IMG/VR virus record: IMGVR_UViG_3300034117_001294
Span: 62,001 to 126,000 of that record
Reading direction: 5' to 3' (one strand)
DNA length: 64,000 nt
This document shows, piece by piece, positions 23,471 through 41,015 of the stretch. Position numbers and translations under genes: made by a program. The notes under the pieces were generated by a model. The model was not told the DNA's origin. It did no database searches and saw only the letters and a list, made by a program, of their open reading frames with translations. Within the stretch, counting starts at the first letter, position 1, and each line of letters begins with the position of its first letter.

Positions 23471-23557
23471 AAGCTCTTAAAATTATAGCTGTATTTAATT
23501 ATAACTGCAACACCTAGAAAAATTTAAGGCATTGTTGCCAAAAAACAACACTGGATC

Positions 23558-23760
23558 TTGACAAGACTAAATAAACACTATACAATAGAGACTAGTTTGT
23601 AAGTTAGGTAGAGAAATTTTTAGCCACAGTTAAAATAGTGGTTGACAAGAGAACTAAATAACTGTACAATTAAGGCATAGTTAGTTAGAAAAGTTGTTAA
23701 AAAACTTTTTAGTCAAAAGATTAAAAAGAGGTTGACAACAACACTAAATAACTGTATAAT
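23558..23760 (+). promoter_or_regulatory. three tandem sigma70 promoters, each with CTAAATA in the spacer
   Basis: TTGACA-17-TACAAT at 23558 and 23642; TTGACA-17-TATAAT at 23732. Confidence 0.9.
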
Positions 23761-23819
23761 TAACACATAGGCAGCAATGGTGCTGTCAATGTAAAGAAAG
23801 TTTTTAAAGAGAAAACAAA

Positions 23820-24408: not shown

Positions 24409-24472
24409 ACACTCTCCAGTCACTGACTCTGAATCAGCTGACAGGCGTAGCCGGAGAGTGTTAACAATTAAT

Positions 24473-24559
24473 GGAGCGTGTTCCCTGTTGCCGGCTGTAA
24501 CCCGGTAGTCACATTAAGCAGGGTGGCGACAAGAGGTTCGATTCCTTCACGCTCCACCA
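24473..24559 (+). tRNA. tRNA-Tyr(GTA)-like, no D arm, 8-bp acceptor
   Basis: GGAGCGTG/CACGCTCC-ACCA, CTGTAAC loop, TTCGATT. Confidence 0.65.
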
Positions 24560-24565
24560 ATAATT

Positions 24566-24640
24566 CCTCTTGTAGCTCAATGGCTAGAGCAATCGGCTGA
24601 TAACCGGTAGACATAAGTTCGATTCTTATCGAGAGGACCA
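24566..24640 (+). tRNA. tRNA-Ile(GAT)
   Basis: cloverleaf, CTGATAA loop, CCA. Confidence 0.9.
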
Positions 24641-24647
24641 AGTTTAT

Positions 24648-24722
24648 ACCGCAGTAGTCCTCTGGGAGGGCAACGGATTGTCTATCCGACTTAGGTGAGT
24701 TCGATCCTCACACACGGAGCCA
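24648..24722 (+). tRNA. tRNA-Asp(GTC), chimeric with mispaired acceptor
   Basis: TTGTCTA loop; 3' part identical to the Asn tRNA at 26253-26286. Confidence 0.6.
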
Positions 24723-24807
24723 TTATAGAAGCACATACAGATCCGCCCGAGTAGTAAGGGAGATAGCGACTAACCGTTGAAGGACTGTTTAAATGTGTTT
24801 CTATAAT

Positions 24808-25219: not shown

Positions 25220-25306
25220 GGAGATGTAGGAAAATTGGTAACCCCAGTGGACTGTAAATCCGCCGCCCGAAAGGCACTACTGGTTCGACTCCAGTCGTCT
25301 CCACCA
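25220..25306 (+). tRNA. tRNA-Tyr(GTA)
   Basis: CTGTAAA loop, long variable arm, CCA. Confidence 0.92.
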
Positions 25307-25389: not shown

Positions 25390-25587
25390 TTTGTAAGTGT
25401 CAGCAAGAGAAAGACTCGCTAGGAAGATTCTTCGAAGGTCAACCTAGTGTTAAAGTAGGGCGGGTTCGAGTACCGTAAATGCAATGGTGCACCTATGTCA
25501 AGTATTCCAAGTGACTTACCTCCTCCCGTCCGGACTTGCATGAATCGGGTGAATGGTTGCGATTACAGAGGTGCAACTACTTACAAA
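25390..25587 (+). ncRNA. CAGCAA-clamp variant RNA
   Basis: TTTGTAAGT-GTCAGCAA ... ACTTACAAA, internal hairpins. Confidence 0.5.
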
Positions 25588-26135: not shown

Positions 26136-26195
26136 TAGGATCGGTTCAGCAAACAAAAAGCTAACTTTTGGTGTCTAGCGACAAAAACGATCCTG
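26136..26195 (+). ncRNA. CAGCAA-clamp RNA 1 (TTG anticodon-like loop)
   Basis: TAGGATCG-GTTCAGCAA...CGATCCTG; inner hairpin loop TTTTGGT. Confidence 0.7.
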
Positions 26196-26205
26196 TTATT
26201 TCTAT

Positions 26206-26284
26206 TCCGTGAAATCCAAGCATGGTGCAAGGACTTGACTGTTAATCAATGATTAGGTGAGTTCGATCCTCACACACGGAGCCA
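26206..26284 (+). tRNA. tRNA-Asn(GTT)
   Basis: CTGTTAA loop, GCCA. Confidence 0.85.
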
Positions 26285-26809
26285 TTCATTAATATCCCAA
26301 CGCTGATTAATCCTAAACAAGATTACAACCCGCGGAAGGATATTACAATTTTGAAAAGCATGTGGAACTTGTGTATTAACAATTGCAGGCTCATTTGTTT
26401 CCACTTTTCCAACAAACTCACAGTCACTGTGGTTGTATAGCATGTAGGTAACATTGCCTTGCCCTGTACCTTGTATTCTCGGCTCTGTAGTTGAAGAATA
26501 AAAATTTAGAAAAGTATTATCAAATCCAAGGATAGGAATGTTTAGACTATAAACAAACCCTCCTGTATCTTTGTGAATAGGATATGTTCCTTTAAGACTT
26601 ACGTTAATAACTGCATAATGAAGATATTGATATAGTCCGTATGTTTGAAGTTGTTCTTTGAGTTCTGGAATATCAGTAAACTCCGAAGCTTTAACATATT
26701 GAAATAAAGGCTCATTAAGTTTTGTATGTTTGAGAACAACATCAACCATTTTATTTCTAATGGTGTCAATGTTTTCAAACTTGATTGATCTATAAAGTGC
26801 CGGATCCAT
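26270..26809 (-). CDS. 2OG-Fe(II)/cupin-like oxygenase
   Basis: IHKD...SLNIP...PHAFQN...R. Confidence 0.65.
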   Translation of the reverse strand: MDPALYRSIKFENIDTIRNKMVDVVLKHTKLNEPLFQYVKASEFTDIPELKEQLQTYGLYQYLHYAVINVSLKGTYPIHKDTGGFVYSLNIPILGFDNTFLNFYSSTTEPRIQGTGQGNVTYMLYNHSDCEFVGKVETNEPAIVNTQVPHAFQNCNILPRVVILFRINQRWDINEWLRV

Positions 26810-26913: not shown

Positions 26914-26976
26914 TAGGATGCGTTCAGCAAACTTTATACATTCAACTTTTAATTGAAAACGTAAAAAAGCATCCTG
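26914..26976 (+). ncRNA. CAGCAA-clamp RNA 2 (Lys TTT anticodon stem-loop)
   Basis: TAGGATGC-GTTCAGCAA...GCATCCTG; TTCAA-CTTTTAA-TTGAA. Confidence 0.75.
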
Positions 26977-27070: not shown

Positions 27071-27147
27071 ACCCGCGTAACTCAGTGGACTAGAGTACTA
27101 CGCTACGAACGTAGGAGTCGGAGGTTCGAATCCTTCCGTGGGTGCCA
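27071..27147 (+). tRNA. tRNA-Arg(ACG)
   Basis: CTACGAA loop, GCCA. Confidence 0.9.
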
Positions 27148-27715
27148 AGTACTTGGTTAGCATATTGATAGATCGTTGCATAGAGGGTCTATATACACAT
27201 CCATCTTTTAAAGATGATAATACTAGACTGATACAATATCTATCTTCGATAGGATTAATGATATTATGAGGTACTCCGACTTGCACAACTGAAGGAAATC
27301 CTATAGGGGCTGAAAACAACAAATCAACTTCAGTTCGATTATATCCTATGTAATGTGAGTTAACCGCAGATAAACTTTGCTCAGTGCGAACAATATTATC
27401 TTTTGGTTTGTACCAATTCATAATGCTGTTAGCACCTCCAAATATCCAATTTATTTTAGTAAAGTCTCCATGTTTAACATCAACATGTATACCGCTAAAA
27501 AAATTAGGAGTAGAGTAGAACACTTCGCAATGATCTGGAAAAATATCTAAATCTGCTAGCAAGTCTAGCATGTCCGAGTTAATATGTTCCTTGATACTAA
27601 TTGAAGAATGATAGGATTTTTTGCCATTAACTATGTTAGGAAGACTTGTTAAACTATGTTTGTTTTTTAACAAGTCAACATTAAAATTTAAGTTATGATG
27701 ATACGTTGTCATCAT
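27098..27715 (-). CDS. 2OG-Fe(II)/cupin-like oxygenase
   Basis: IHVD...KINW...WY...PHNIIN...RYCIS; 3' end runs antisense into tRNA-Arg. Confidence 0.65.
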   Translation of the reverse strand: MMTTYHHNLNFNVDLLKNKHSLTSLPNIVNGKKSYHSSISIKEHINSDMLDLLADLDIFPDHCEVFYSTPNFFSGIHVDVKHGDFTKINWIFGGANSIMNWYKPKDNIVRTEQSLSAVNSHYIGYNRTEVDLLFSAPIGFPSVVQVGVPHNIINPIEDRYCISLVLSSLKDGCVYRPSMQRSINMLTKYLAPTEGFEPPTPTFVA

Positions 27716-27811: not shown

Positions 27812-27850
27812 CCTAATAAGTTTTTGCCACATTGTGGCACCAATAAATAC

Positions 27851-27942
27851 GGAAAGTAATGCAGGGGAGTTGGTTCCCCGACCAGCCTTGAAAACTGGGT
27901 TCTCAGAAATGGGATGGGGTTCGACTCCTCTGCTTTCCACCA
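27851..27942 (+). tRNA. tRNA-Ser(TGA), 8/4-type fold with long D stem
   Basis: GGAAAGTA/TGCTTTCC, CTTGAAA loop, 4-bp T stem. Confidence 0.7.
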
Positions 27943-27947
27943 ATAAT

Positions 27948-28460
27948 ATGAACGAAGATTATTTTATCCCTGTTAACACTGACATTAATTTTTTACCTAA
28001 AGTAAAAGAATTTATTCCGAATGCAATTTGGAAATGGGTTCCGTCTATGTTTATTGCTACAAATTTATCTAGTACGCACATCGGTGATGATCAATTACTG
28101 AGTAAAATTCATAAGGAATTTTTAGGAGAGTTAAATCTTTATAAAATTCCATGTAAATCTGTCTATGGATGGCACCAGGATAAAAATTCAATAGGGTGTT
28201 CATTAAATATGGCATTAGATCGATATCATTGTCATACATTGTTTTCAGTTGGGAATCACGGAACTCCTTTCTTACAAAAAGTAATTGAACTTGAGTACGA
28301 TCCTAATACATGGTATGCATTTAATTCAAAACAGGTGCATACTGTAATAAATCTAGACGAAAAAGATAGATATCTACTTTCATATGTACTACCGGGAATT
28401 TTTTCCTACACAGATCTAAAATCTTGGTTAGTACAGCATACATATACTTCTCTGATGTAA
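27948..28460 (+). CDS. 2OG-Fe(II)/cupin-like oxygenase
   Basis: WHQD...SLN...VHTVIN...RYLLS; start moved to ATG 27948 after the tRNA. Confidence 0.65.
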   Translation: MNEDYFIPVNTDINFLPKVKEFIPNAIWKWVPSMFIATNLSSTHIGDDQLLSKIHKEFLGELNLYKIPCKSVYGWHQDKNSIGCSLNMALDRYHCHTLFSVGNHGTPFLQKVIELEYDPNTWYAFNSKQVHTVINLDEKDRYLLSYVLPGIFSYTDLKSWLVQHTYTSLM

Positions 28461-28524: not shown

Positions 28525-28639
28525 AGGATACATACAGCAATGTCTAACGACACGTTGGTTCGATTCCAACATTATCCGCTTTGGATGATTCGCTCAATGG
28601 TAGAGCAATGGGCTTCATGCCCATCGAAACTGTATCCTG
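28525..28639 (+). ncRNA. CAGCAA-clamp RNA 3 containing a circularly permuted tRNA (TCA anticodon)
   Basis: order T arm, closed acceptor, D arm, anticodon arm inside AGGATACA/TGTATCCT. Confidence 0.75.
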
Positions 28640-28825: not shown

Positions 28826-29395
28826 ATGTATTTTGTTAAATTAAAAGAACAATTTTTTCTAACACTAGATGCAAATATTGCAAAAGAAGAATTTGCAAAT
28901 TTTGGATCTGTAATCGGCAATGAATTTAAAGGTATACAATATAATAGAATACCGCAGTATTGTACTGATACTATGTTAGAAGTCGTTCCGGAAAATTATA
29001 GAAAACATTTTACATCGGGCATTATGAAAATTAATGTACCGTATGCAAGACCACACACTGATAGCGGAGTAACCGCAGTATTAAATTTTTATGTACAGAC
29101 TGCTGATGCTGTGACAGTATTTTATAATCAGCTTACTGAAGATTCGGTTTTAACAAAGATAAAAAATCAAACTAACGGAAGTGTCTTTAAATTAAAAGAT
29201 CTAGTTCCTGCTGCAAATTTTAAAGCATTGCCGGGAGACGTTTGGTTACTGGATGTAACGAAGCCGCATTCTGTTATTGCTGCATCCGCAGTTGATAGAG
29301 TAGCATTCTGTTTACACACTAACAGTTTATCTTTCGAAGAAGTCAAAAAAATATTTGAATGCCCGGGTGGTGGAATGGTAGACACACTTTACTGA
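28826..29395 (+). CDS. 2OG-Fe(II)/cupin-like oxygenase
   Basis: PHTD...LNFY...PHSV...R; 3' end runs into a tRNA. Confidence 0.65.
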   Translation: MYFVKLKEQFFLTLDANIAKEEFANFGSVIGNEFKGIQYNRIPQYCTDTMLEVVPENYRKHFTSGIMKINVPYARPHTDSGVTAVLNFYVQTADAVTVFYNQLTEDSVLTKIKNQTNGSVFKLKDLVPAANFKALPGDVWLLDVTKPHSVIAASAVDRVAFCLHTNSLSFEEVKKIFECPGGGMVDTLY

Positions 29396-29824: not shown

Positions 29825-30400
29825 TTATATAATTAAAGGTTTGAAAAGCTCAACTATTTCTTCCCAAGTAGAAAATTTTGCAGTTGCCCGAATGCTTAGA
29901 CACCAGCGAATATTTGCAATGTCCCGATTAGCAACATTATGAGGTATATTAGTTCTAACTAAACAAGGCCCTTCAATTCTAGCAGATTCAATGCAGACAA
30001 CATCGGCTCGATCAAAATGAATATATGGTGTGCCGCCGCTTGACATTTTAATATTATTTTGTTTACCGGGCAACGGGGAATACCAAAACATTTCTGAATT
30101 AGCAGACCCCCATACTATATTGATACCCCATACACAATGAGTAACTCCGTTAATAGTATCAATATGAATGTCTAGATTGCTGTTAGCATTACCTCTAAAA
30201 AAAATACATTCTGAAAGAATATCTATTCCGAAATTTTTAAAAAATTCAATAGACTCATCTGTAAGAAATTCTTTATGGTCAACTAACTTCATAGCCCAAT
30301 TGTGCTCTGATTTAGAATAAACCAAATCAATATAATGTTGCATGTCTATATTATCTTTTAATATTTTGACAGGAATATTTAATTTGTAATGGTTTTGCAT
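29825..30400 (-). CDS. 2OG-Fe(II)/cupin-like oxygenase
   Basis: IHID...GIN...WY...PHNVAN...RWCLS. Confidence 0.65.
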   Translation of the reverse strand: MQNHYKLNIPVKILKDNIDMQHYIDLVYSKSEHNWAMKLVDHKEFLTDESIEFFKNFGIDILSECIFFRGNANSNLDIHIDTINGVTHCVWGINIVWGSANSEMFWYSPLPGKQNNIKMSSGGTPYIHFDRADVVCIESARIEGPCLVRTNIPHNVANRDIANIRWCLSIRATAKFSTWEEIVELFKPLII

Positions 30401-31405: not shown

Positions 31406-31469
31406 TAGGATCAGTTCAGCAAACATAATAAAAATTTCATTTATACTGAAACATAAAAAGTTGATCCTG
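31406..31469 (+). ncRNA. CAGCAA-clamp RNA 4 (TAT anticodon stem-loop)
   Basis: TAGGATCA-GTTCAGCAA...TGATCCTG; TTTCA-TTTATAC-TGAAA. Confidence 0.72.
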
Positions 31470-31728: not shown

Positions 31729-31789
31729 TAGGTTAATTACAGCAATAAAAAATGGCTGTCTGCTAGGACTTTAAACTAGTATTAACCTG
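31729..31789 (+). ncRNA. CAGCAA-clamp RNA 5
   Basis: TAGGTTAA-TTACAGCAA...TTAACCTG. Confidence 0.7.
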
Positions 31790-32657: not shown

Positions 32658-32795
32658 ATGAGTACAAAAGATACACTTGATAAAGCATATGGCAATATTC
32701 CCAAAGAGCCGGTATCATTTATACAATTTGATTTACCGACATTTAGAGGAATTAAGTATTACTGGCTGCGGCTAGTAAGACTTTTTACTCGTTAA
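32658..32795 (+). CDS. hypothetical 45-aa protein
   Basis: AAGGA SD, ATG 32658. Confidence 0.5.
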   Translation: MSTKDTLDKAYGNIPKEPVSFIQFDLPTFRGIKYYWLRLVRLFTR

Positions 32796-32806
32796 GTTTT
32801 GACCTT

Positions 32807-32924
32807 TAGGTTCTTTTCAGCAATTAAAAATAATCTTTCTGTAAAAAAGAGGGGCTGGGTTCGAATCCCGGGCGTGAGTTGGTCTTCACGTTGGTGTAGT
32901 GGTAGCACGTAAAAAGAGAACCTG
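32807..32924 (+). ncRNA. CAGCAA-clamp RNA 6 containing a circularly permuted tRNA (GTA anticodon)
   Basis: order anticodon arm, T arm, closed acceptor, D arm inside AGGTTCT/AGAACCT. Confidence 0.75.
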
Positions 32925-32955
32925 TTTAACTTTAACTTTAACTTCAAGGAAACAC

Positions 32956-33183
32956 ATGGCACGTTTAACGTCACAAGCAGCGGTAGAGATGGTAGGTAAT
33001 CGTTTTGATCTAGTATTGATTGCATCAATTCGTGCTAGAGAATTAAAGCGTGGGCATATGCCTATGGTTACCTGTAATAACGGATTCAACGTCACTGCAC
33101 TTCGAGAAATTGAAGCAGGTAAAGTGGGACGTGATTATTTGGAAAAGCTTCGCAAGCCTCCTAAAAAGAGTGAACACTATTAA
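32956..33183 (+). CDS. rpoZ: RNA polymerase omega subunit
   Basis: MARLT...VGNRFDLVLIAS.RAREL...ALREIEAG; SD before ATG 32956. Confidence 0.85.
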   Translation: MARLTSQAAVEMVGNRFDLVLIASIRARELKRGHMPMVTCNNGFNVTALREIEAGKVGRDYLEKLRKPPKKSEHY

Positions 33184-33188
33184 AGATC

Positions 33189-33647
33189 ATGCAGCCAATC
33201 TATCTTAATAAAGAAGTCGATAAGACCGGCGTTGAGCTAGAAATTTTACACGTTGAACAAATAGCCAATAGTCCAGTCTATACATTTTTTATCAGACACA
33301 TGGCCGAATTGATAGATTCCGGGTTCGCAATGGCACGAACTAGTTGGAATGACAATGATTGTGGAGCCATTTATGCAGAAGAGAATGGTGTTATAGTAGG
33401 GGCCATAATCTACAGTAGAGCATACCTACACAAAAATTGCCTGTGGATCGAACTTAGTGCAGTACGTAGTGATTGCCGGAAACGCGGCATTTATTCAGTG
33501 TTACATAATTATTTTGAAATGCTTGCAAAAAAAATGAACTGCGATTCTATTTCTAGTAAAGTACATAAAAACAATGTAATTCGATTATCTTCAGCAGAAA
33601 AAGTTGGCATGAATATTGCTTTCTACCAAATGGTTAAAATGATCTAA
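33189..33647 (+). CDS. GNAT acetyltransferase
   Basis: V..D.RKRGI motif A; KVH..N. Confidence 0.7.
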   Translation: MQPIYLNKEVDKTGVELEILHVEQIANSPVYTFFIRHMAELIDSGFAMARTSWNDNDCGAIYAEENGVIVGAIIYSRAYLHKNCLWIELSAVRSDCRKRGIYSVLHNYFEMLAKKMNCDSISSKVHKNNVIRLSSAEKVGMNIAFYQMVKMI

Positions 33648-33688
33648 TAAATATTAAACAATATGCGTGAATACTTGCATTAATTAAT

Positions 33689-34438
33689 ATGAAAATAGAT
33701 CAATACTTAAAACCAAAAAATATACCGGGATGGCTAGAGAAAGTATTAGCTTCTCAGCAACGAACAGAGTATAATAAAATACCAACTTATCCAGAAGTTG
33801 AAACTATCAGAGAGTTTTACACTGCACACACATGCAATACTTTTGTTGATCTAGGATGTTGGCTAGGAGTTTTATCAGCACAGGTTAAAAAAGCAGTAAA
33901 TCCGAACAAGCACATACTGATCGATGCTGTGCCTACATACCTGTATCTTGCAAAAAGTCTATTGACAACAGAACAATTAGATGCTAATATAGATATAGTC
34001 GAAATGTCAATTATCGATCGTGAAGAATTTCCAAGTCATTTAACAGTAAATCTTGATGATACATTAAACACTTCTTCAATTAGAACAACCACCAAAGCTG
34101 ATATAACAGTTAACATTCCAATTGCAAATCCAAAAACATGCAATGATGCCGCAGTTGAGATTTTTAATCTTGCACCGAATAGTACATATTTAAAAATGGA
34201 TTTAGATGGAGTTGATTACTCATTTTTAAAATCTTTAATAAATCTCTCTATACTGCCCAGCGTTATTCATTTTGAAGCATGGCTAATGACTCCTTCAGAA
34301 TTTAAAGAATGTATTAGTATTTTGGCTCAGTTTGAATCGCTCGGTTACAAAGTTCCTAATCCTCTCGAACTTCTTGGTGCAGATATTAGGGTAATCGTTA
34401 TTTCAAGACAACAATTTAAAAACATCAAAGTAAGGTAA
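33689..34438 (+). CDS. FkbM-like methyltransferase
   Basis: FVDLGCWLG, LKMDLDG.D, IHFE. Confidence 0.6.
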   Translation: MKIDQYLKPKNIPGWLEKVLASQQRTEYNKIPTYPEVETIREFYTAHTCNTFVDLGCWLGVLSAQVKKAVNPNKHILIDAVPTYLYLAKSLLTTEQLDANIDIVEMSIIDREEFPSHLTVNLDDTLNTSSIRTTTKADITVNIPIANPKTCNDAAVEIFNLAPNSTYLKMDLDGVDYSFLKSLINLSILPSVIHFEAWLMTPSEFKECISILAQFESLGYKVPNPLELLGADIRVIVISRQQFKNIKVR

Positions 34439-34440
34439 AA

Positions 34441-34905
34441 ATGGCAAAATGTTATCAATTGGTCGGAGTGCCTGCCTCGGGCAAGAGCACTTGGATTAAA
34501 GAACAAGATTGGGCTTCTGACTGCGTAGTAGTGAGTACTGACGATTTTGTTGAAGCCTATGCTGTAGAACAAGGCAAGACCTACTCGGAAGTATTTGTAG
34601 AGTACATGCCGACGGCTGTAAATCTAATGGCTGACAAAGTTGTACAAGCACGTGAAGCTGGCAAGGACATTATATGGGATCAAACCAGTACTACTCTAGT
34701 AAGCCGTATTCGTAAGTTTAATATGTTGCCTGACTACGAGCATATTGCTGTGGTGTTTAAGACACCGGAACATAAAGAACTGTTTAGACGGTTATGGAGT
34801 CGCCCAGGCAAAGACATTCCAGAGCATGTTATCGCCAGCATGATTGCCAGTTGGGAAGAGCCTACTGTAGAGGAAGGCTTTAAGGAAGTTTGGTTCGCCC
34901 AATAA
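34441..34905 (+). CDS. P-loop kinase (AAA_33, polynucleotide-kinase-like)
   Basis: GVPASGKSTW, STDD, WDQT, EPT.EEGF. Confidence 0.8.
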   Translation: MAKCYQLVGVPASGKSTWIKEQDWASDCVVVSTDDFVEAYAVEQGKTYSEVFVEYMPTAVNLMADKVVQAREAGKDIIWDQTSTTLVSRIRKFNMLPDYEHIAVVFKTPEHKELFRRLWSRPGKDIPEHVIASMIASWEEPTVEEGFKEVWFAQ

Positions 34906-34910
34906 TTACT

Positions 34911-34946
34911 GCCCTGCTTGACAGGGCTTTCTTTTGACTGTATAAT
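34911..34946 (+). promoter_or_regulatory. terminator hairpin overlapping a sigma70 promoter
   Basis: GCCCTG-CTTGA-CAGGGC-TTTCTTTT; TTGACA 34918, TATAAT 34941. Confidence 0.7.
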
Positions 34947-34974
34947 ATGTACTTACTACACTTAAGGAAACATC

Positions 34975-35148
34975 ATGGCAGGCAAAGCAAAATCAATCTA
35001 TCTCACAATATTGCCTAAGGGCAAGCATATGAGCGTATTCAAGAAGGTGTTCTTTGAAGCTAAATCCTACAATGAATATGTTAAGACTGAAGAATTTAAG
35101 GCTGCATGGCCTGCTGAACTATATGATATTATAAAAGAGACGTATTGA
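34975..35148 (+). CDS. hypothetical 57-aa protein
   Basis: AAGGA SD; coupled to the next gene. Confidence 0.6.
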   Translation: MAGKAKSIYLTILPKGKHMSVFKKVFFEAKSYNEYVKTEEFKAAWPAELYDIIKETY

Positions 35149-35699
35149 TGAAAATATGGATAACTAGCGACCTACATTTTGGACATAAGAACATTATGAA
35201 GTTCTGTCCACAGACAAGAGCACGATTTAGAGACGATGTTGCGTATATGAATAATGCAATGGCGGAAGAATGGAATGCTAAGGTCGCTCCCGAGGATATG
35301 GTTTACATCTTAGGAGATGTAGCATTTATGTCAGGCAGTGATGCAGGCCGAATGATGCATCGCTTAAATGGTGATAAAATTTTAGTTGAAGGTAATCACG
35401 ATCGCAAGACACTAATGGACGAAACGTTCCGTAGTGCATTTAAGGAAATACACAAGTATTTGGATATTACCTATGACGGCCACAAGTGCGTGATGTTTCA
35501 TTATCCAATTGCCGAATGGGACCAAATGCACAGAGGTGCATTACACTTTCATGGTCACTTACATGGTGGTAAGAGTGGAATCGAACAGTATCGTGCGTTG
35601 GACGTAGGAATGGATTCAACCGGAGAAATTGTTATATCTATGGATCGTGCTGTACGTATGATCAAAGATAATGTGATTAAAGGACATCATACCGGTTGA
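35148..35699 (+). CDS. calcineurin-like metallophosphoesterase
   Basis: SDLHFGH, LGD, GNHD, HGHLH. Confidence 0.9.
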   Translation: MKIWITSDLHFGHKNIMKFCPQTRARFRDDVAYMNNAMAEEWNAKVAPEDMVYILGDVAFMSGSDAGRMMHRLNGDKILVEGNHDRKTLMDETFRSAFKEIHKYLDITYDGHKCVMFHYPIAEWDQMHRGALHFHGHLHGGKSGIEQYRALDVGMDSTGEIVISMDRAVRMIKDNVIKGHHTG

Positions 35700-35749
35700 C
35701 AGTATGGTAAAACCATGCTATAATATAACTTATTAACAAGGAGAGTAGC

Positions 35750-36286
35750 ATGGAAGAATTTACTATGGAATTAACTGGGATGGATTTGGTCCATAAGGCC
35801 CAAGTTTTCGCTATTGCTGCTCACAGTGCCGTGGGTCAAAAGCGTAAGTATACCGGAGAACCTTACTTTGTTCACCCTGCAGAAGTTGCAAGGATTGTGG
35901 CAGAGGTTCCTGGCAGTACTGCTGAAATGGTAGCGGCTGCTTGGTTACACGATACAGTAGAAGATACCGGAGTTACCGCCACTGACATCCATATGAATTT
36001 TGGTCCGGAGGTTGCGGCGTTAGTTGGTTGGTTAACTGACGTGTCAAAGCCAGAAGATGGCAATCGTGCTCATCGCAAGGCCATGGACCGTGCTCACACT
36101 GCTGAAGCACCTGCTGAAGCACAGACTGTTAAGTTGGCAGATTTGATCTCCAACAGTCGTAGCATCATGGCACACGATCCTGCTTTTGCTAGGACTTACT
36201 TAGAAGAAAAGCGTTTGATGTTAGAAGTAATGACTCGAGGTGATCGTGGGTTGCACGCCGAAGCCAGCCGGTTCGTAGGTGTATGA
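35750..36286 (+). CDS. HD-domain hydrolase (SpoT/Mesh1-like)
   Basis: H..QKRK.TGEPY..HP, LHDTVED, VKLAD; own sigma70 promoter at 35696-35724. Confidence 0.85.
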   Translation: MEEFTMELTGMDLVHKAQVFAIAAHSAVGQKRKYTGEPYFVHPAEVARIVAEVPGSTAEMVAAAWLHDTVEDTGVTATDIHMNFGPEVAALVGWLTDVSKPEDGNRAHRKAMDRAHTAEAPAEAQTVKLADLISNSRSIMAHDPAFARTYLEEKRLMLEVMTRGDRGLHAEASRFVGV

Positions 36287-40458: not shown

Positions 40459-40495
40459 TAATACATAGCAAGCAGTAATGCAAGCTAAGAAGTTT

Positions 40496-41003
40496 TAGGT
40501 TAGGTACAGCAACATTCATTAACTATGAACTGTTAGACACTGTGGTAGAAACTGGAGCAGAGTGCGTAAAAACACCGAGCGTTGAAGGGGTCTATTGAAG
40601 CAAGACTAACGAGCACAGAGTGATGGCCTGTGTAAAATAAAAGCAGTCAACAACTAACCTGTTAAATCCTAGGATGGATTCAGCAACTTAAACAATAAAC
40701 TCTGAACTAACTGCTATAGAAGATGGTCGCAGGACACAGTAGAAATACTGTTCTAGGAAACTAGACTCGAAGGAATAGACGACACATTGGAAAGACTTTG
40801 TATGATGATTGTACAGACACAACACAATCTAGGCGACATGAATTGTATGCTAGGCTTGCGAGACTTGAACCGATATACTGGGGATGGGGGTAAGCAGAAA
40901 ATAAAAATCCGTCTCAGCCATCCTGTTGTAGTTAGGTTAATTACAGCAATTTTAAATTGTATCATTAAAACCCGTGGGAACAACAAAGCCCACATTTAAC
41001 CTG
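40496..41003 (+). ncRNA. three tandem CAGCAA-clamp RNAs (40496-40661, 40670-40925, 40933-41003)
   Basis: TAGGTTAG/CTAACCTG, TAGGATGG/CCATCCTG, TAGGTTAA/TTAACCTG, each with WCAGCAA. Confidence 0.75.
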
Positions 41004-41015
41004 AAGGAAAAGAAA

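What the first reader, a model, noticed from the sequence alone, without database searches (positions are those of the whole stretch)
32807..32924. Second permuted tRNA (GUA anticodon) with a different breakpoint
Order: anticodon arm TCTTT-CTGTAAA-AAAGA, T arm CTGGG-TTCGAAT-CCCGG, acceptor hairpin GCGTGAG/TTCACGT, D arm GTGT-AGTGGTA-GCAC. The clamp sits between the D and anticodon arms rather than in the variable loop, indicating independent capture of tRNA shapes by the same scaffold. It lies just upstream of rpoZ.
Basis: seen in the sequence. Interest (0 to 1): 0.72.

Follow-up and report, generated by a model that had tools for sequence, protein, structure and literature searches.

The report
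Permuted tRNA-shaped phage RNA module
A jumbo phage carries, inside its tRNA gene array, a conserved small RNA whose four arms are those of a tRNA in rotated order, held shut by a short stem; it belongs to a large, apparently undescribed family of phage RNAs and most likely imitates a tRNA rather than decoding.

Summary
Window 32808-32923 (+) folds as a 7-11 bp terminal clamp enclosing an anticodon-like hairpin, a canonical T arm, a closed 7-bp acceptor hairpin and a canonical D arm. A 16-sequence MAFFT alignment of versions from other phage contigs pairs 98% of cells; 15 of 26 pairs change on both sides. Cutting the acceptor loop and joining D arm to anticodon stem gives a 71-nt cloverleaf that ARAGORN calls tRNA(GUA); the native order gives none.

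It is one of nine copies in the window of one scaffold: AGG-N4, about 3 nt, CAGCAA, cargo, N4'-CCU, G, UU. At least 173 distinct copies occur in related phages, including cultured Synechococcus phage BUCT-ZZ01. Cargos are modular: a bare anticodon-type hairpin, tRNA bodies permuted at different points, or 150-250 nt RNAs.

I read it as a non-decoding tRNA mimic. It has no CCA (37 of 38 canonical tRNAs encode one), a conserved closed loop UUGGUC, and at least ten different "anticodons" on a near-invariant body. The topology resembles YrlA, but the Ro60 motif and gene are absent. The scaffold unexpectedly resembles Dictyostelium Class I RNAs. The mimic's function is inferred, not shown. I found no paper describing the family.

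The parts
32808..32817 (+). Clamp, 5' strand. The core is AGGTTCT (7 bp). TTT can extend the helix.
   Evidence: MFE fold. Clamps of different sequence pair in other phages, e.g. AGGTTCA/TGAGCCT in L011 and AGAATCG/CGATTCT in L190.
32818..32823 (+). CAGCAA, the single-stranded signature motif of the scaffold family.
   Evidence: Invariant in alignment A1. Present in all 9 window copies and in 173 distinct copies in related loci.
32824..32833 (+). A/U-rich linker. Clamp plus linkers total 26 nt, the length of tRNA positions 1-26.
   Evidence: Read from the sequence.
32834..32850 (+). Anticodon-like hairpin with a 5-bp stem and the 7-nt loop CUGUAAA.
   Evidence: Four of 5 pairs covary. Loop positions 33, 37 and 38 are conserved (0.34-0.67 bit); positions 34 and 35 are nearly random (1.78 and 1.92 bits).
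32851..32854 (+). GGGG, the analogue of the variable loop.
   Evidence: Position in the ARAGORN cloverleaf of the re-threaded sequence.
32855..32871 (+). T arm, CTGGG-TTCGAAT-CCCGG.
   Evidence: The loop and the G53-C61 pair are invariant. Two stem pairs covary and 100% of cells pair.
32872..32891 (+). Closed acceptor-like hairpin of 7 bp. It joins the T stem with no linker. Loop UUGGUC at 32879-32884.
   Evidence: Six of 6 counted pairs covary. The loop consensus UUGGUCW is conserved. There is no CCA.
32892..32908 (+). Analogues of U8 and G9, then the D arm GTGT-AGTGGTA-GCAC.
   Evidence: The analogues of U8, G10, A14 and G19 are invariant; those of G18 and A21 are nearly invariant.
32909..32916 (+). 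Analogue of G26 and the A-rich 3' linker (GUAAAAAG). Many family members share (A)CGUA + A-run here.
   Evidence: Alignment A1. Family listings.
32917..32924 (+). Clamp, 3' strand AGAACCT, then an unpaired G followed by UU.
   Evidence: The 3' flank is GTT in 97 of 173 family copies.
28525..28638 (+). Order: T arm, closed acceptor hairpin, D arm, anticodon-like hairpin with a 5-nt loop.
   Evidence: Full-length but sub-threshold match to Rfam YrlA at 25.9 bits against a cut-off of 69. Versions in other phages score 29-32 bits.
26915..26975 (+). Simple scaffold copy: clamp, CAGCAA and one hairpin with the loop CUUUUAA. Other simple copies are at 26137-26194, 31407-31468, 31730-31788 and 40934-41002.
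   Evidence: 9 clear copies plus 3 probable chance matches in the genome, against about 0.6 in shuffles. Anticodon-loop signature statistics.
40497..40924 (+). Two scaffold copies with large conserved cargos (40497-40660 and 40671-40924) of unknown nature.
   Evidence: The same pair is conserved in L029, L031, L035, L036, L060, L061, L065 and L187. No Rfam match.

Best explanation
The element is a conserved structured RNA, co-transcribed with the phage tRNA array.

**Shown**
- A 7-bp terminal clamp followed by single-stranded CAGCAA forms a scaffold used many times in this phage and its relatives.
- In this copy the scaffold carries an anticodon-type hairpin and a complete tRNA upper body: T arm, closed acceptor helix stacked directly on it, and D arm.
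- The connectivity is canonical and the elbow-forming nucleotides are present, so an L-shaped fold is expected.

**Inferred**
- It is a tRNA mimic, not a decoder. The acceptor end stays closed and is not aminoacylated.
- The RNA is released or stabilised because the clamp resembles a CCA-less acceptor stem (unpaired G, then UU) lying among RNase P and 3'-processing sites.
- It acts by occupying proteins that recognise tRNA shape and anticodon loops.

**Speculative**
- The targets are host tRNA-directed defence nucleases or tRNA-modifying or processing enzymes. The hypervariable triplet in an otherwise fixed loop would fit an arms race.
For: - **Structure.** Covariation in all five helices. The T loop and the analogues of U8, A14, G18, G19 and A21 are invariant or nearly so. 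The re-threaded sequence is a canonical cloverleaf.
- **Family.** 21 strong matches above 80 bits (the window plus 20 distinct phage contigs) and 129 matches in all. Nine scaffold copies in the window against about 0.6 expected. The family is present in the cultured phage BUCT-ZZ01.
- **Not a decoder.**
  - 37 of 38 canonical tRNAs of the window encode CCA; none of the 9 scaffolds does.
  - The acceptor loop UUGGUCW is conserved, and the loop-closing pair is mostly U.G or U-A.
  - Versions with near-identical bodies carry at least 10 different triplets, including AUG and GGA. L091 differs from L076/L187 by one base that turns GUA into GAA.
  - A canonical class II tRNA-Tyr(GUA) already exists at 25220-25306.
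  - Sister classes cannot decode: anticodon-like loops of 5-6 nt, no acceptor hairpin, or no tRNA body at all.
- **Scaffold hairpin.** In simple copies the hairpin has the anticodon-loop form YU-NNN-R in 40% of cases, against 0.6% of shuffles.
- **Transcription.** Metatranscriptome contigs from relatives cover the element. This shows presence only.
- **Precedent.** YrlA has the same T-AS-D order and is modified by tRNA enzymes (PMC4201824).
Against: - There is no direct evidence for ends, stability, modification or binding partners. The read data were assembled contigs, without end information.
- Every feature needed for a real tRNA after processing is present: a 7-bp acceptor, a 7-nt loop with U33 and A37, and a 4-nt variable loop.
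- Eight relatives elsewhere carry N-CCA right after the acceptor 3' strand, so some family members may be genuine permuted tRNA genes.
- M. smegmatis YrlA is cut by RNase P in its acceptor loop and receives CCA (PMC4201824), so a closed loop in the gene does not prove a closed loop in the RNA.
- The decoy idea has no test behind it.
Confidence: 0.6

Rival explanations
1. It is a genuine circularly permuted tRNA gene. RNase P and a 3' nuclease open the acceptor loop and CCA is added. The product is a two-piece tRNA held together by the clamp, or a re-ligated one, that reads Tyr codons.
For: The re-threaded sequence is a canonical cloverleaf. The acceptor hairpin has 7 bp. Eight permuted relatives encode N-CCA after the acceptor 3' strand and have G/C-starting 5' strands. 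M. smegmatis YrlA shows that such processing can occur (PMC4201824).
Against: - There is no CCA, although the phage encodes CCA on 37 of 38 tRNAs.
- The acceptor loop is conserved, and position 1 is U in most versions.
- The triplet changes freely among near-identical versions.
- Bacterial tRNA-Tyr is class II with a long variable arm, from general knowledge; the canonical one at 25220 is 87 nt.
- No CCA-adding enzyme, RtcB or Rnl1 was found in the held 229 kb. The record is only 65% complete, and the Rnl1 control search found the family in none of its control genomes, so that absence is uninformative.
Confidence: 0.12
2. The tRNA body is a handle rather than an effector. It recruits tRNA-processing or modification enzymes, or simply stabilises the RNA. 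The active part is the scaffold (CAGCAA and the A-rich internal loop), which binds an unknown partner common to all cargos.
For: The scaffold motifs are the only features shared by all cargo classes. Cargos range from 30 to 240 nt. The scaffold resembles Class I RNAs, which bind an RRM protein (PMC7919456).
Against: This does not explain why tRNA bodies and anticodon-type loops are the preferred cargo. It also does not explain why the elbow nucleotides are so strictly kept. No RRM protein is encoded in this record or in BUCT-ZZ01.
Confidence: 0.15
3. It is a member of the YrlA/Y RNA family and works with a Ro60 (Rsr) protein.
For: It has the same T arm, closed acceptor stem-loop and D arm order enclosed by a terminal stem. 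The sister element matches the YrlA model over its full length at 26-32 bits.
Against: - This element does not match RF02553 at E up to 10.
- There is no GNCGAAN0-1G motif in the 5' strand.
- There is no TROVE gene in this record or in the complete BUCT-ZZ01 genome.
- Scores of sister elements are far below the cut-off of 69.
Confidence: 0.07
4. It is a cis-regulatory leader of rpoZ, or debris of tRNA gene rearrangement without a function of its own.
For: It lies 32 nt upstream of rpoZ in the window, and in L004 and L011. The array holds interleaved ORFs with no Pfam match that could be homing endonucleases and drive rearrangement. Assigning them that role is a guess.
Against: The element occurs away from rpoZ in L023, L076 and many loci fetched without rpoZ. 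Compensatory changes across 20 other contigs exclude debris.
Confidence: 0.04

Closest known systems
YrlA (Y RNA-like A; Rfam RF02553), the bacterial and mycobacteriophage tRNA mimic
   Same: A terminal stem encloses a T arm, a closed acceptor-like stem-loop and a D arm in that order. tRNA tertiary-contact nucleotides are kept. The family is also found in phages.
   Different: - There is no GNCGAAN0-1G Ro60 motif and no rsr gene nearby or in the genome.
- An extra anticodon-type hairpin sits between the stem and the T arm.
- The scaffold has the CAGCAA motif and is multi-copy inside a tRNA array.
- There is no match to the model for this element.
Circularly permuted tRNA genes (Cyanidioschyzon merolae, some green algae and archaea; Soma 2014, cited in PMC10085705)
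   Same: The 3' half lies upstream of the 5' half. A short spacer joins the two acceptor strands. Paired leader and trailer close the precursor.
   Different: Those genes are eukaryotic or archaeal, are processed by the splicing endonuclease through a circular intermediate, and give a standard tRNA with a fixed anticodon. Here the host is bacterial, the triplet is not conserved, the spacer loop is conserved, and the closing stem carries its own conserved motif.
Two-piece tmRNA from permuted ssrA genes; split tRNAs of Nanoarchaeum (general knowledge)
   Same: A permuted or split gene whose parts are held together by helices.
   Different: There is no mRNA-like domain. ARAGORN found no tmRNA, and RF04321 gave only chance-level scores elsewhere. 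No evidence of cleavage into two pieces exists.
Dictyostelium Class I RNAs (Rfam RF01414; PMC7919456)
   Same: Resemblance to the scaffold, not the tRNA body. Both have a 6-7 bp terminal stem with compensatory changes and termini AG...CU-GU. The single-stranded motif (U)UACAGCAA follows the 5' strand directly. The rest is variable and A/U-rich. A simple copy is about 60 nt, and both families are multi-copy. Simple phage copies score 22-34 bits.
   Different: All scores are below the cut-off of 41.5; this element scores 17.5 bits on its 5' part only. Class I RNAs are eukaryotic nuclear genes with a DUSE promoter. Whether the likeness is common descent or convergence is unknown.
Phage T4 species 1 and 2 RNAs (rnaC, rnaD)
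   Same: Small stable RNAs of unknown function, encoded in a phage tRNA cluster, with partial tRNA features.
   Different: They have no clamp or CAGCAA scaffold and no permuted order. This was read directly from AF158101.

Membership tests
Canonical tRNA (RF00005) | Arms in the order acceptor 5', D, anticodon, T, acceptor 3', recognised by tRNA finders | tested here: not met
   ARAGORN and Rfam find nothing at 32808-32923.
Canonical tRNA (RF00005) | Cloverleaf with conserved tertiary nucleotides once the order is restored | tested here: met
   The re-threaded sequence is called a 71-nt tRNA(GTA). The analogues of U8, A14, G18, G19, A21, T54-C56 and A58 are conserved.
Canonical tRNA (RF00005) | Free acceptor end with CCA, encoded in this phage's tRNAs | tested here: not met
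   The loop is UUGGUC with no CCA, whereas 37 of 38 canonical tRNAs encode it.
Canonical tRNA (RF00005) | Anticodon conserved among orthologues | tested here: not met
   At least 10 different triplets occur on near-identical bodies. Positions 34 and 35 carry 1.78 and 1.92 bits of entropy.
YrlA / bacterial Y RNA (RF02553) | T arm, closed acceptor-like stem-loop and D arm enclosed by a terminal stem | tested here: met
YrlA / bacterial Y RNA (RF02553) | GNCGAAN0-1G motif near the 5' end (PMC4201824) | tested here: not met
   The 5' region reads AGGUUCUUUUCAGCAAUU and holds no such motif.
YrlA / bacterial Y RNA (RF02553) | Encoded within about 4 kb of a Ro60/TROVE gene on the same strand | tested here: not met
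   PF05731 is absent from the 229-kb record, which is 65% complete, and from the complete BUCT-ZZ01 genome.
YrlA / bacterial Y RNA (RF02553) | Score at or above the Rfam gathering cut-off (69 bits) | tested here: not met
   This element gives no hit at E up to 10. Sister class B elements score 26-32 bits.
Circularly permuted tRNA gene | 3' half upstream of the 5' half, with complementary acceptor strands joined by a spacer | tested here: met
Circularly permuted tRNA gene | Processing through circularisation and acceptor opening to a standard mature tRNA | not testable with these tools
   Only assembled metatranscriptome contigs were available, with no end or junction information at this element.
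Dictyostelium Class I RNA (RF01414) | Short terminal stem plus the 11-nt motif CCUUACAGCAA, with a model score at or above the cut-off | tested here: not met
   The element scores 17.5 bits on 32810-32857 only. Simple scaffold copies score 22-34.4 bits against a cut-off of 41.5. The stem and CAGCAA are present.
Phage 'CAGCAA-clamp' scaffold family (defined here) | AGG-N4, 1-4 nt, YAGCAA, cargo, N4'-CCU, G, UU, on the tRNA strand inside a tRNA array | tested here: met

The most novel reading that the evidence does not exclude
Phages of several lineages, from T4-like cyanophages to jumbo phages, share a modular RNA platform. It consists of a Class-I-RNA-like clamp with CAGCAA that displays tRNA parts: bare anticodon loops, upper bodies, or whole permuted tRNAs. 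The platform would be a counter-measure to host systems that sense or cut tRNAs. Some members, those with an encoded CCA, would be processed into split, chargeable tRNAs; these would be the first permuted or split tRNA genes outside archaea and eukaryotes.
Probability: 0.25. Interest if true: 0.9.

Novelty: new variant of a known kind. Interest (0 to 1): 0.78.

Why it matters
**An unannotated layer in phage tRNA arrays.** tRNA finders and Rfam miss these RNAs, so phage tRNA arrays hold a second, hidden set of genes. This window alone has nine, and the related loci hold at least 173 distinct copies.

**Three open questions become testable.**

- What phage tRNA clusters are for, at a time when tRNA-cleaving defence systems are being found.
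- Whether permuted or split tRNA genes exist in the bacterial world.
- Where the Dictyostelium Class I RNA design comes from, since it was thought to be unique to social amoebas.

**A cultured system exists.** Synechococcus elongatus PCC 7942 and phage BUCT-ZZ01 carry a version of this very element.

Tried and rejected
- **Rfam.** Searches at gathering and at permissive thresholds found no family for the element.
- **T4 rnaC/rnaD.** Read directly from the T4 record; they have a different architecture.
- **Ro60 link.** No TROVE gene in the record or in BUCT-ZZ01.
- **Phage-encoded partners.** No CCA-adding enzyme or RtcB in the held record. The Rnl1 search is uninformative because its control found the family in no control genome. 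No RRM protein in this record or in BUCT-ZZ01.
- **Cis-regulation of rpoZ.** Rejected because the position relative to rpoZ varies.
- **Promoter and terminator scan.** Nothing telling around the element.
- **Alternative pairing.** A switch between UCUUU and the 3' AAAGA is not conserved in other versions (read).
- **Cultured phages.** BLAST of the element found only BUCT-ZZ01. The large cargos at 40480-41010 found nothing.
- **Metatranscriptome contigs.** Relatives are present, but no ends, joints or circular junctions are visible at the element.
- **Literature.** Searches for permuted or split tRNAs in phages and for tRNA-like decoys found no description.
- **Known ribozyme or K-turn motifs.** I compared the scaffold loop with them from memory only and saw no fit. 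This was not tested.

Full report
**Setting.** The window is bases 62001-126000 of a 228.8-kb IMG/VR virus record, estimated 65% complete, which makes it a jumbo phage. It holds 38 tRNA genes, all on the + strand, between 24.5 and 40.4 kb. Three consensus sigma-70-type promoters precede the array (read). The finding lies between a small conserved ORF (32659-32795) and an rpoZ-like gene at 32956-33183, which matches PF01192 at E 4.8e-13.

- The minimum-free-energy fold gives a terminal helix, 32807-32817 with 32914-32924, that encloses four hairpins.
- By itself this fold is not statistically remarkable: z = -1.70, and 12 of 200 shuffles fold as well.
- Neither ARAGORN nor Rfam reports anything at the site.

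**Comparative support.** Loci fetched through the rpoZ-like protein and through a motif scan yielded versions of the element from many phage contigs.

- A MAFFT alignment of 16 distinct versions pairs 98.0% of cells in the five helices. Shuffles pair 81% and slid partners 43-54%.
- Fifteen of 26 pairs change on both sides, and 0 of 500 shuffles reach this.
- The acceptor hairpin covaries at all six counted pairs.
- The T loop, the G53-C61 pair and the analogues of U8, G10, A14 and G19 are invariant. The analogues of G18 and A21 are nearly so.
- A covariance model built from the alignment finds 21 matches above 80 bits, the window plus 20 distinct contigs. It finds 129 matches at E < 0.01 in 167 sources.
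- Members found without any requirement for a paired clamp also have perfectly paired clamps of other sequence.

**Is it tRNA-shaped?** Yes.

- The T stem runs straight into the hairpin, as T stem runs into acceptor stem in a tRNA. The hairpin is followed by UG and then the D stem, like positions 8-10.
- The D stem is followed by one G, like position 26. The chain then leaves through the clamp and returns at the anticodon-type stem.
- I cut the hairpin loop and joined G32909 to T32834. ARAGORN called the result a canonical 71-nt tRNA with anticodon GTA.
- The same re-threading works for 90 of 129 family members. It works for 0 of 129 shuffled or reversed cargos.

**The scaffold.** The clamp is not private to this element.

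- Nine copies of AGG-N4, 1-4 nt, YAGCAA, cargo, N4'-CCU, G, UU lie on the + strand of the window, all within the tRNA array. Shuffled genomes give about 0.6.
- In the fetched phage loci there are 173 distinct copies. Four are in the complete genome of the cultured Synechococcus phage BUCT-ZZ01, where they are unannotated.
- The cargos fall into classes:
  - Simple copies of 50-65 nt with one hairpin.
  - This element's class: anticodon-type hairpin, T arm, closed acceptor, D arm.
  - The class of 28525-28638: T arm, acceptor, D arm, then an anticodon-like hairpin with a 5-6 nt loop. Its break is in the variable region.
  - A class with T and D arms only.
  - Whole permuted tRNA-Lys-, Thr- or Asn-like bodies.
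  - Two conserved large cargos of about 160 and 250 nt.
- In simple copies, 63% have a perfect hairpin with a 5-bp stem and 7-nt loop, against 14% of shuffles. The loop has the anticodon-loop form YU-NNN-R in 40%, against 0.6%.
- The anticodon-type hairpin is therefore part of the scaffold's own repertoire. This element can be read as a simple copy with a T-acceptor-D module inserted after that hairpin.

**Decoder or mimic?** Several results argue against decoding.

- Thirty-seven of 38 canonical tRNAs of the window encode CCA; none of the nine scaffolds does.
- The acceptor loop is conserved (UUGGUCW). The pair that closes it is usually U.G or U-A rather than G-C.
- The triplet in the loop differs among versions with almost the same body: GUA, UGA, ACG, GAA, UAG, AUG, GGA, GCA, CAA and CGU.
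- Loop positions 34 and 35 carry 1.78 and 1.92 bits of entropy, while positions 33, 37 and 38 carry 0.34-0.67.
- L004, whose RpoZ is 99% identical, has UGA in place of GUA.
- A canonical class II tRNA-Tyr(GUA) is already present at 25220-25306.
- No CCA-adding enzyme or RtcB is encoded in the held record. The record is incomplete, and the Rnl1 search is uninformative because its control found the family nowhere.

Other results keep the permuted-gene reading alive for part of the family.

- Eight permuted relatives elsewhere carry N-CCA directly after a 7-bp acceptor 3' strand, followed by 1-10 nt and a G/C-starting 5' strand.
- About one such case would be expected by chance. That figure is my own estimate of 1/64 per element, not a tool result.
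- M. smegmatis YrlA is opened by RNase P and receives CCA (PMC4201824).

I therefore rate the true permuted tRNA reading at 0.12 for this element. For some family members it remains open.

**Comparison with known RNAs.**

- *YrlA.* It has the same T-AS-D order inside a terminal stem (PMC4201824). The sister element at 28525 and its relatives match the YrlA model over its full length, but at 26-32 bits against a cut-off of 69. This element does not match. The GNCGAAN0-1G motif is absent, and no TROVE gene exists in this record or in BUCT-ZZ01. It works like a YrlA-type mimic but is not a member.
- *Permuted tRNA genes of algae and archaea.* They share the gene order but not the domain of life, the processing machinery or the fixed anticodon.
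- *T4 rnaC and rnaD.* They do not have the scaffold.
- *Dictyostelium Class I RNAs.* Unexpectedly, the scaffold resembles them. Simple copies score 22-34.4 bits on RF01414 against a cut-off of 41.5. The shared features are a covarying terminal stem, the termini AG...CUGU and the motif UUACAGCAA placed directly after the 5' strand (PMC7919456). That paper used a score of 25 or more plus a stem as its candidate criterion, and it found the class in no other organism. I cannot tell homology from convergence.

**Expression.** Logan contigs of four freshwater metatranscriptomes contain the element of close relatives. X5 record 29 covers 32797-32926 and is joined directly to a tRNA-Gly. X14 record 21 and X12 record 8 run on into rpoZ. 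This shows presence in RNA libraries only. No ends or junctions could be read.

**Mechanism.**

- *Shown:* a conserved five-helix RNA with a tRNA upper body and an anticodon-type loop, on a reused scaffold, in a tRNA operon.
- *Inferred:* it folds into an L shape and stays closed at the acceptor end. It is released or protected because the clamp looks like a CCA-less acceptor stem among processing sites. Several scaffolds start 4-5 nt after the CCA of the preceding tRNA. It then competes for proteins that read tRNA shape.
- *Speculative:* the targets are tRNA-directed defence nucleases. The fixed loop frame with a free triplet would fit that, and recent work shows that phage tRNA loci counter such systems (for example PMC13096335).

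**Novelty.** Six literature searches found no description of permuted tRNA shapes or of this scaffold in phages. I class the element as a new variant of a known kind, a permuted tRNA mimic. The scaffold family itself may deserve a category of its own.

Noticed in passing
window 26137-26194, 26915-26975, 31407-31468, 31730-31788, 40934-41002: Five simple copies of the CAGCAA-clamp scaffold, each about 60 nt. They are mostly wedged a few bases after the CCA of one tRNA and before the next tRNA. Some score 22-23 bits on the Dictyostelium Class I RNA model.
   Followed up: partly
L023:5182-5238: A simple scaffold copy scores 34.4 bits on Rfam RF01414 (cut-off 41.5). It holds CUUACAGCAA, which is 10 of the 11 bases of the Class I motif, and ends in CUG. 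Class I RNAs were reported as unique to social amoebas.
   Followed up: partly
window 40497-40660 and 40671-40924: Two adjacent scaffold copies carry large cargos of about 150 and 240 nt. The pair is conserved in many related phages. It matches no Rfam family and nothing among cultured phages.
   Followed up: partly
L099:9806-9933(-), L129:7577-7700, L127:10492-10618, L137:6585-6711, L170:4733-4855, L154:565-694, L151:9857-9965, L101:829-955(-): These permuted tRNA bodies sit on the same scaffold. Their acceptor 3' strand is followed by N-CCA, a 1-10 nt spacer and a G/C-starting 5' strand. They are candidate true permuted or split tRNA genes in phages.
   Followed up: partly
window 24472-24556 and 27851-27938: Sub-threshold tRNA-Sec-like matches of 30.7 and 35.6 bits against a cut-off of 47. 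The first ends in CCA and seems to lack a normal D arm. Similar matches recur in L119, L005 and L023, so these may be unusual but real tRNAs.
   Followed up: no
window 24640-24730 and 26206-26285: Two unannotated tRNA-like stretches share the same T arm and the same 3' end (...cacacggagcca). Neither tRNA finder reports them.
   Followed up: no
window 25393-25520: A possible variant scaffold (GTAAGTG, t, CAGCAAG ...) with T-arm-like and D-arm-like pieces. Its clamp does not start with AGG. Not verified.
   Followed up: no
window about 23557-23762: Three tandem near-consensus sigma-70 promoters (TTGACA, 17 nt, TACAAT or TATAAT) with a shared spacer sequence lie just upstream of the tRNA array.
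   Followed up: no
window 32956-33183: A phage-encoded homologue of the RNA polymerase omega subunit (PF01192). Relatives occur on at least 129 IMG/VR contigs of up to 525 kb, usually next to tRNA arrays.
   Followed up: partly
window 32659-32795: A small ORF of 45 codons with a ribosome-binding site lies between tRNA-Ala and the element. A homologue sits directly upstream of rpoZ in L072 and L077, which lack the element.
   Followed up: partly
window 26270-26809(-), 27098-27715(-), 27834-28460(+), 28826-29395(+), 29825-30400(-): ORFs of 180-208 codons are interleaved with the tRNA genes. The four that were scanned have no Pfam match; 29825-30400 was not scanned. Whether they are homing endonucleases was not tested.
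   Followed up: no
window 33189-36286: Downstream genes match GNAT acetyltransferase, a methyltransferase (below the Pfam cut-off), an AAA_33 kinase-like protein, a calcineurin-like phosphoesterase and an HD domain. The set is reminiscent of RNA end-healing or repair functions.
   Followed up: no
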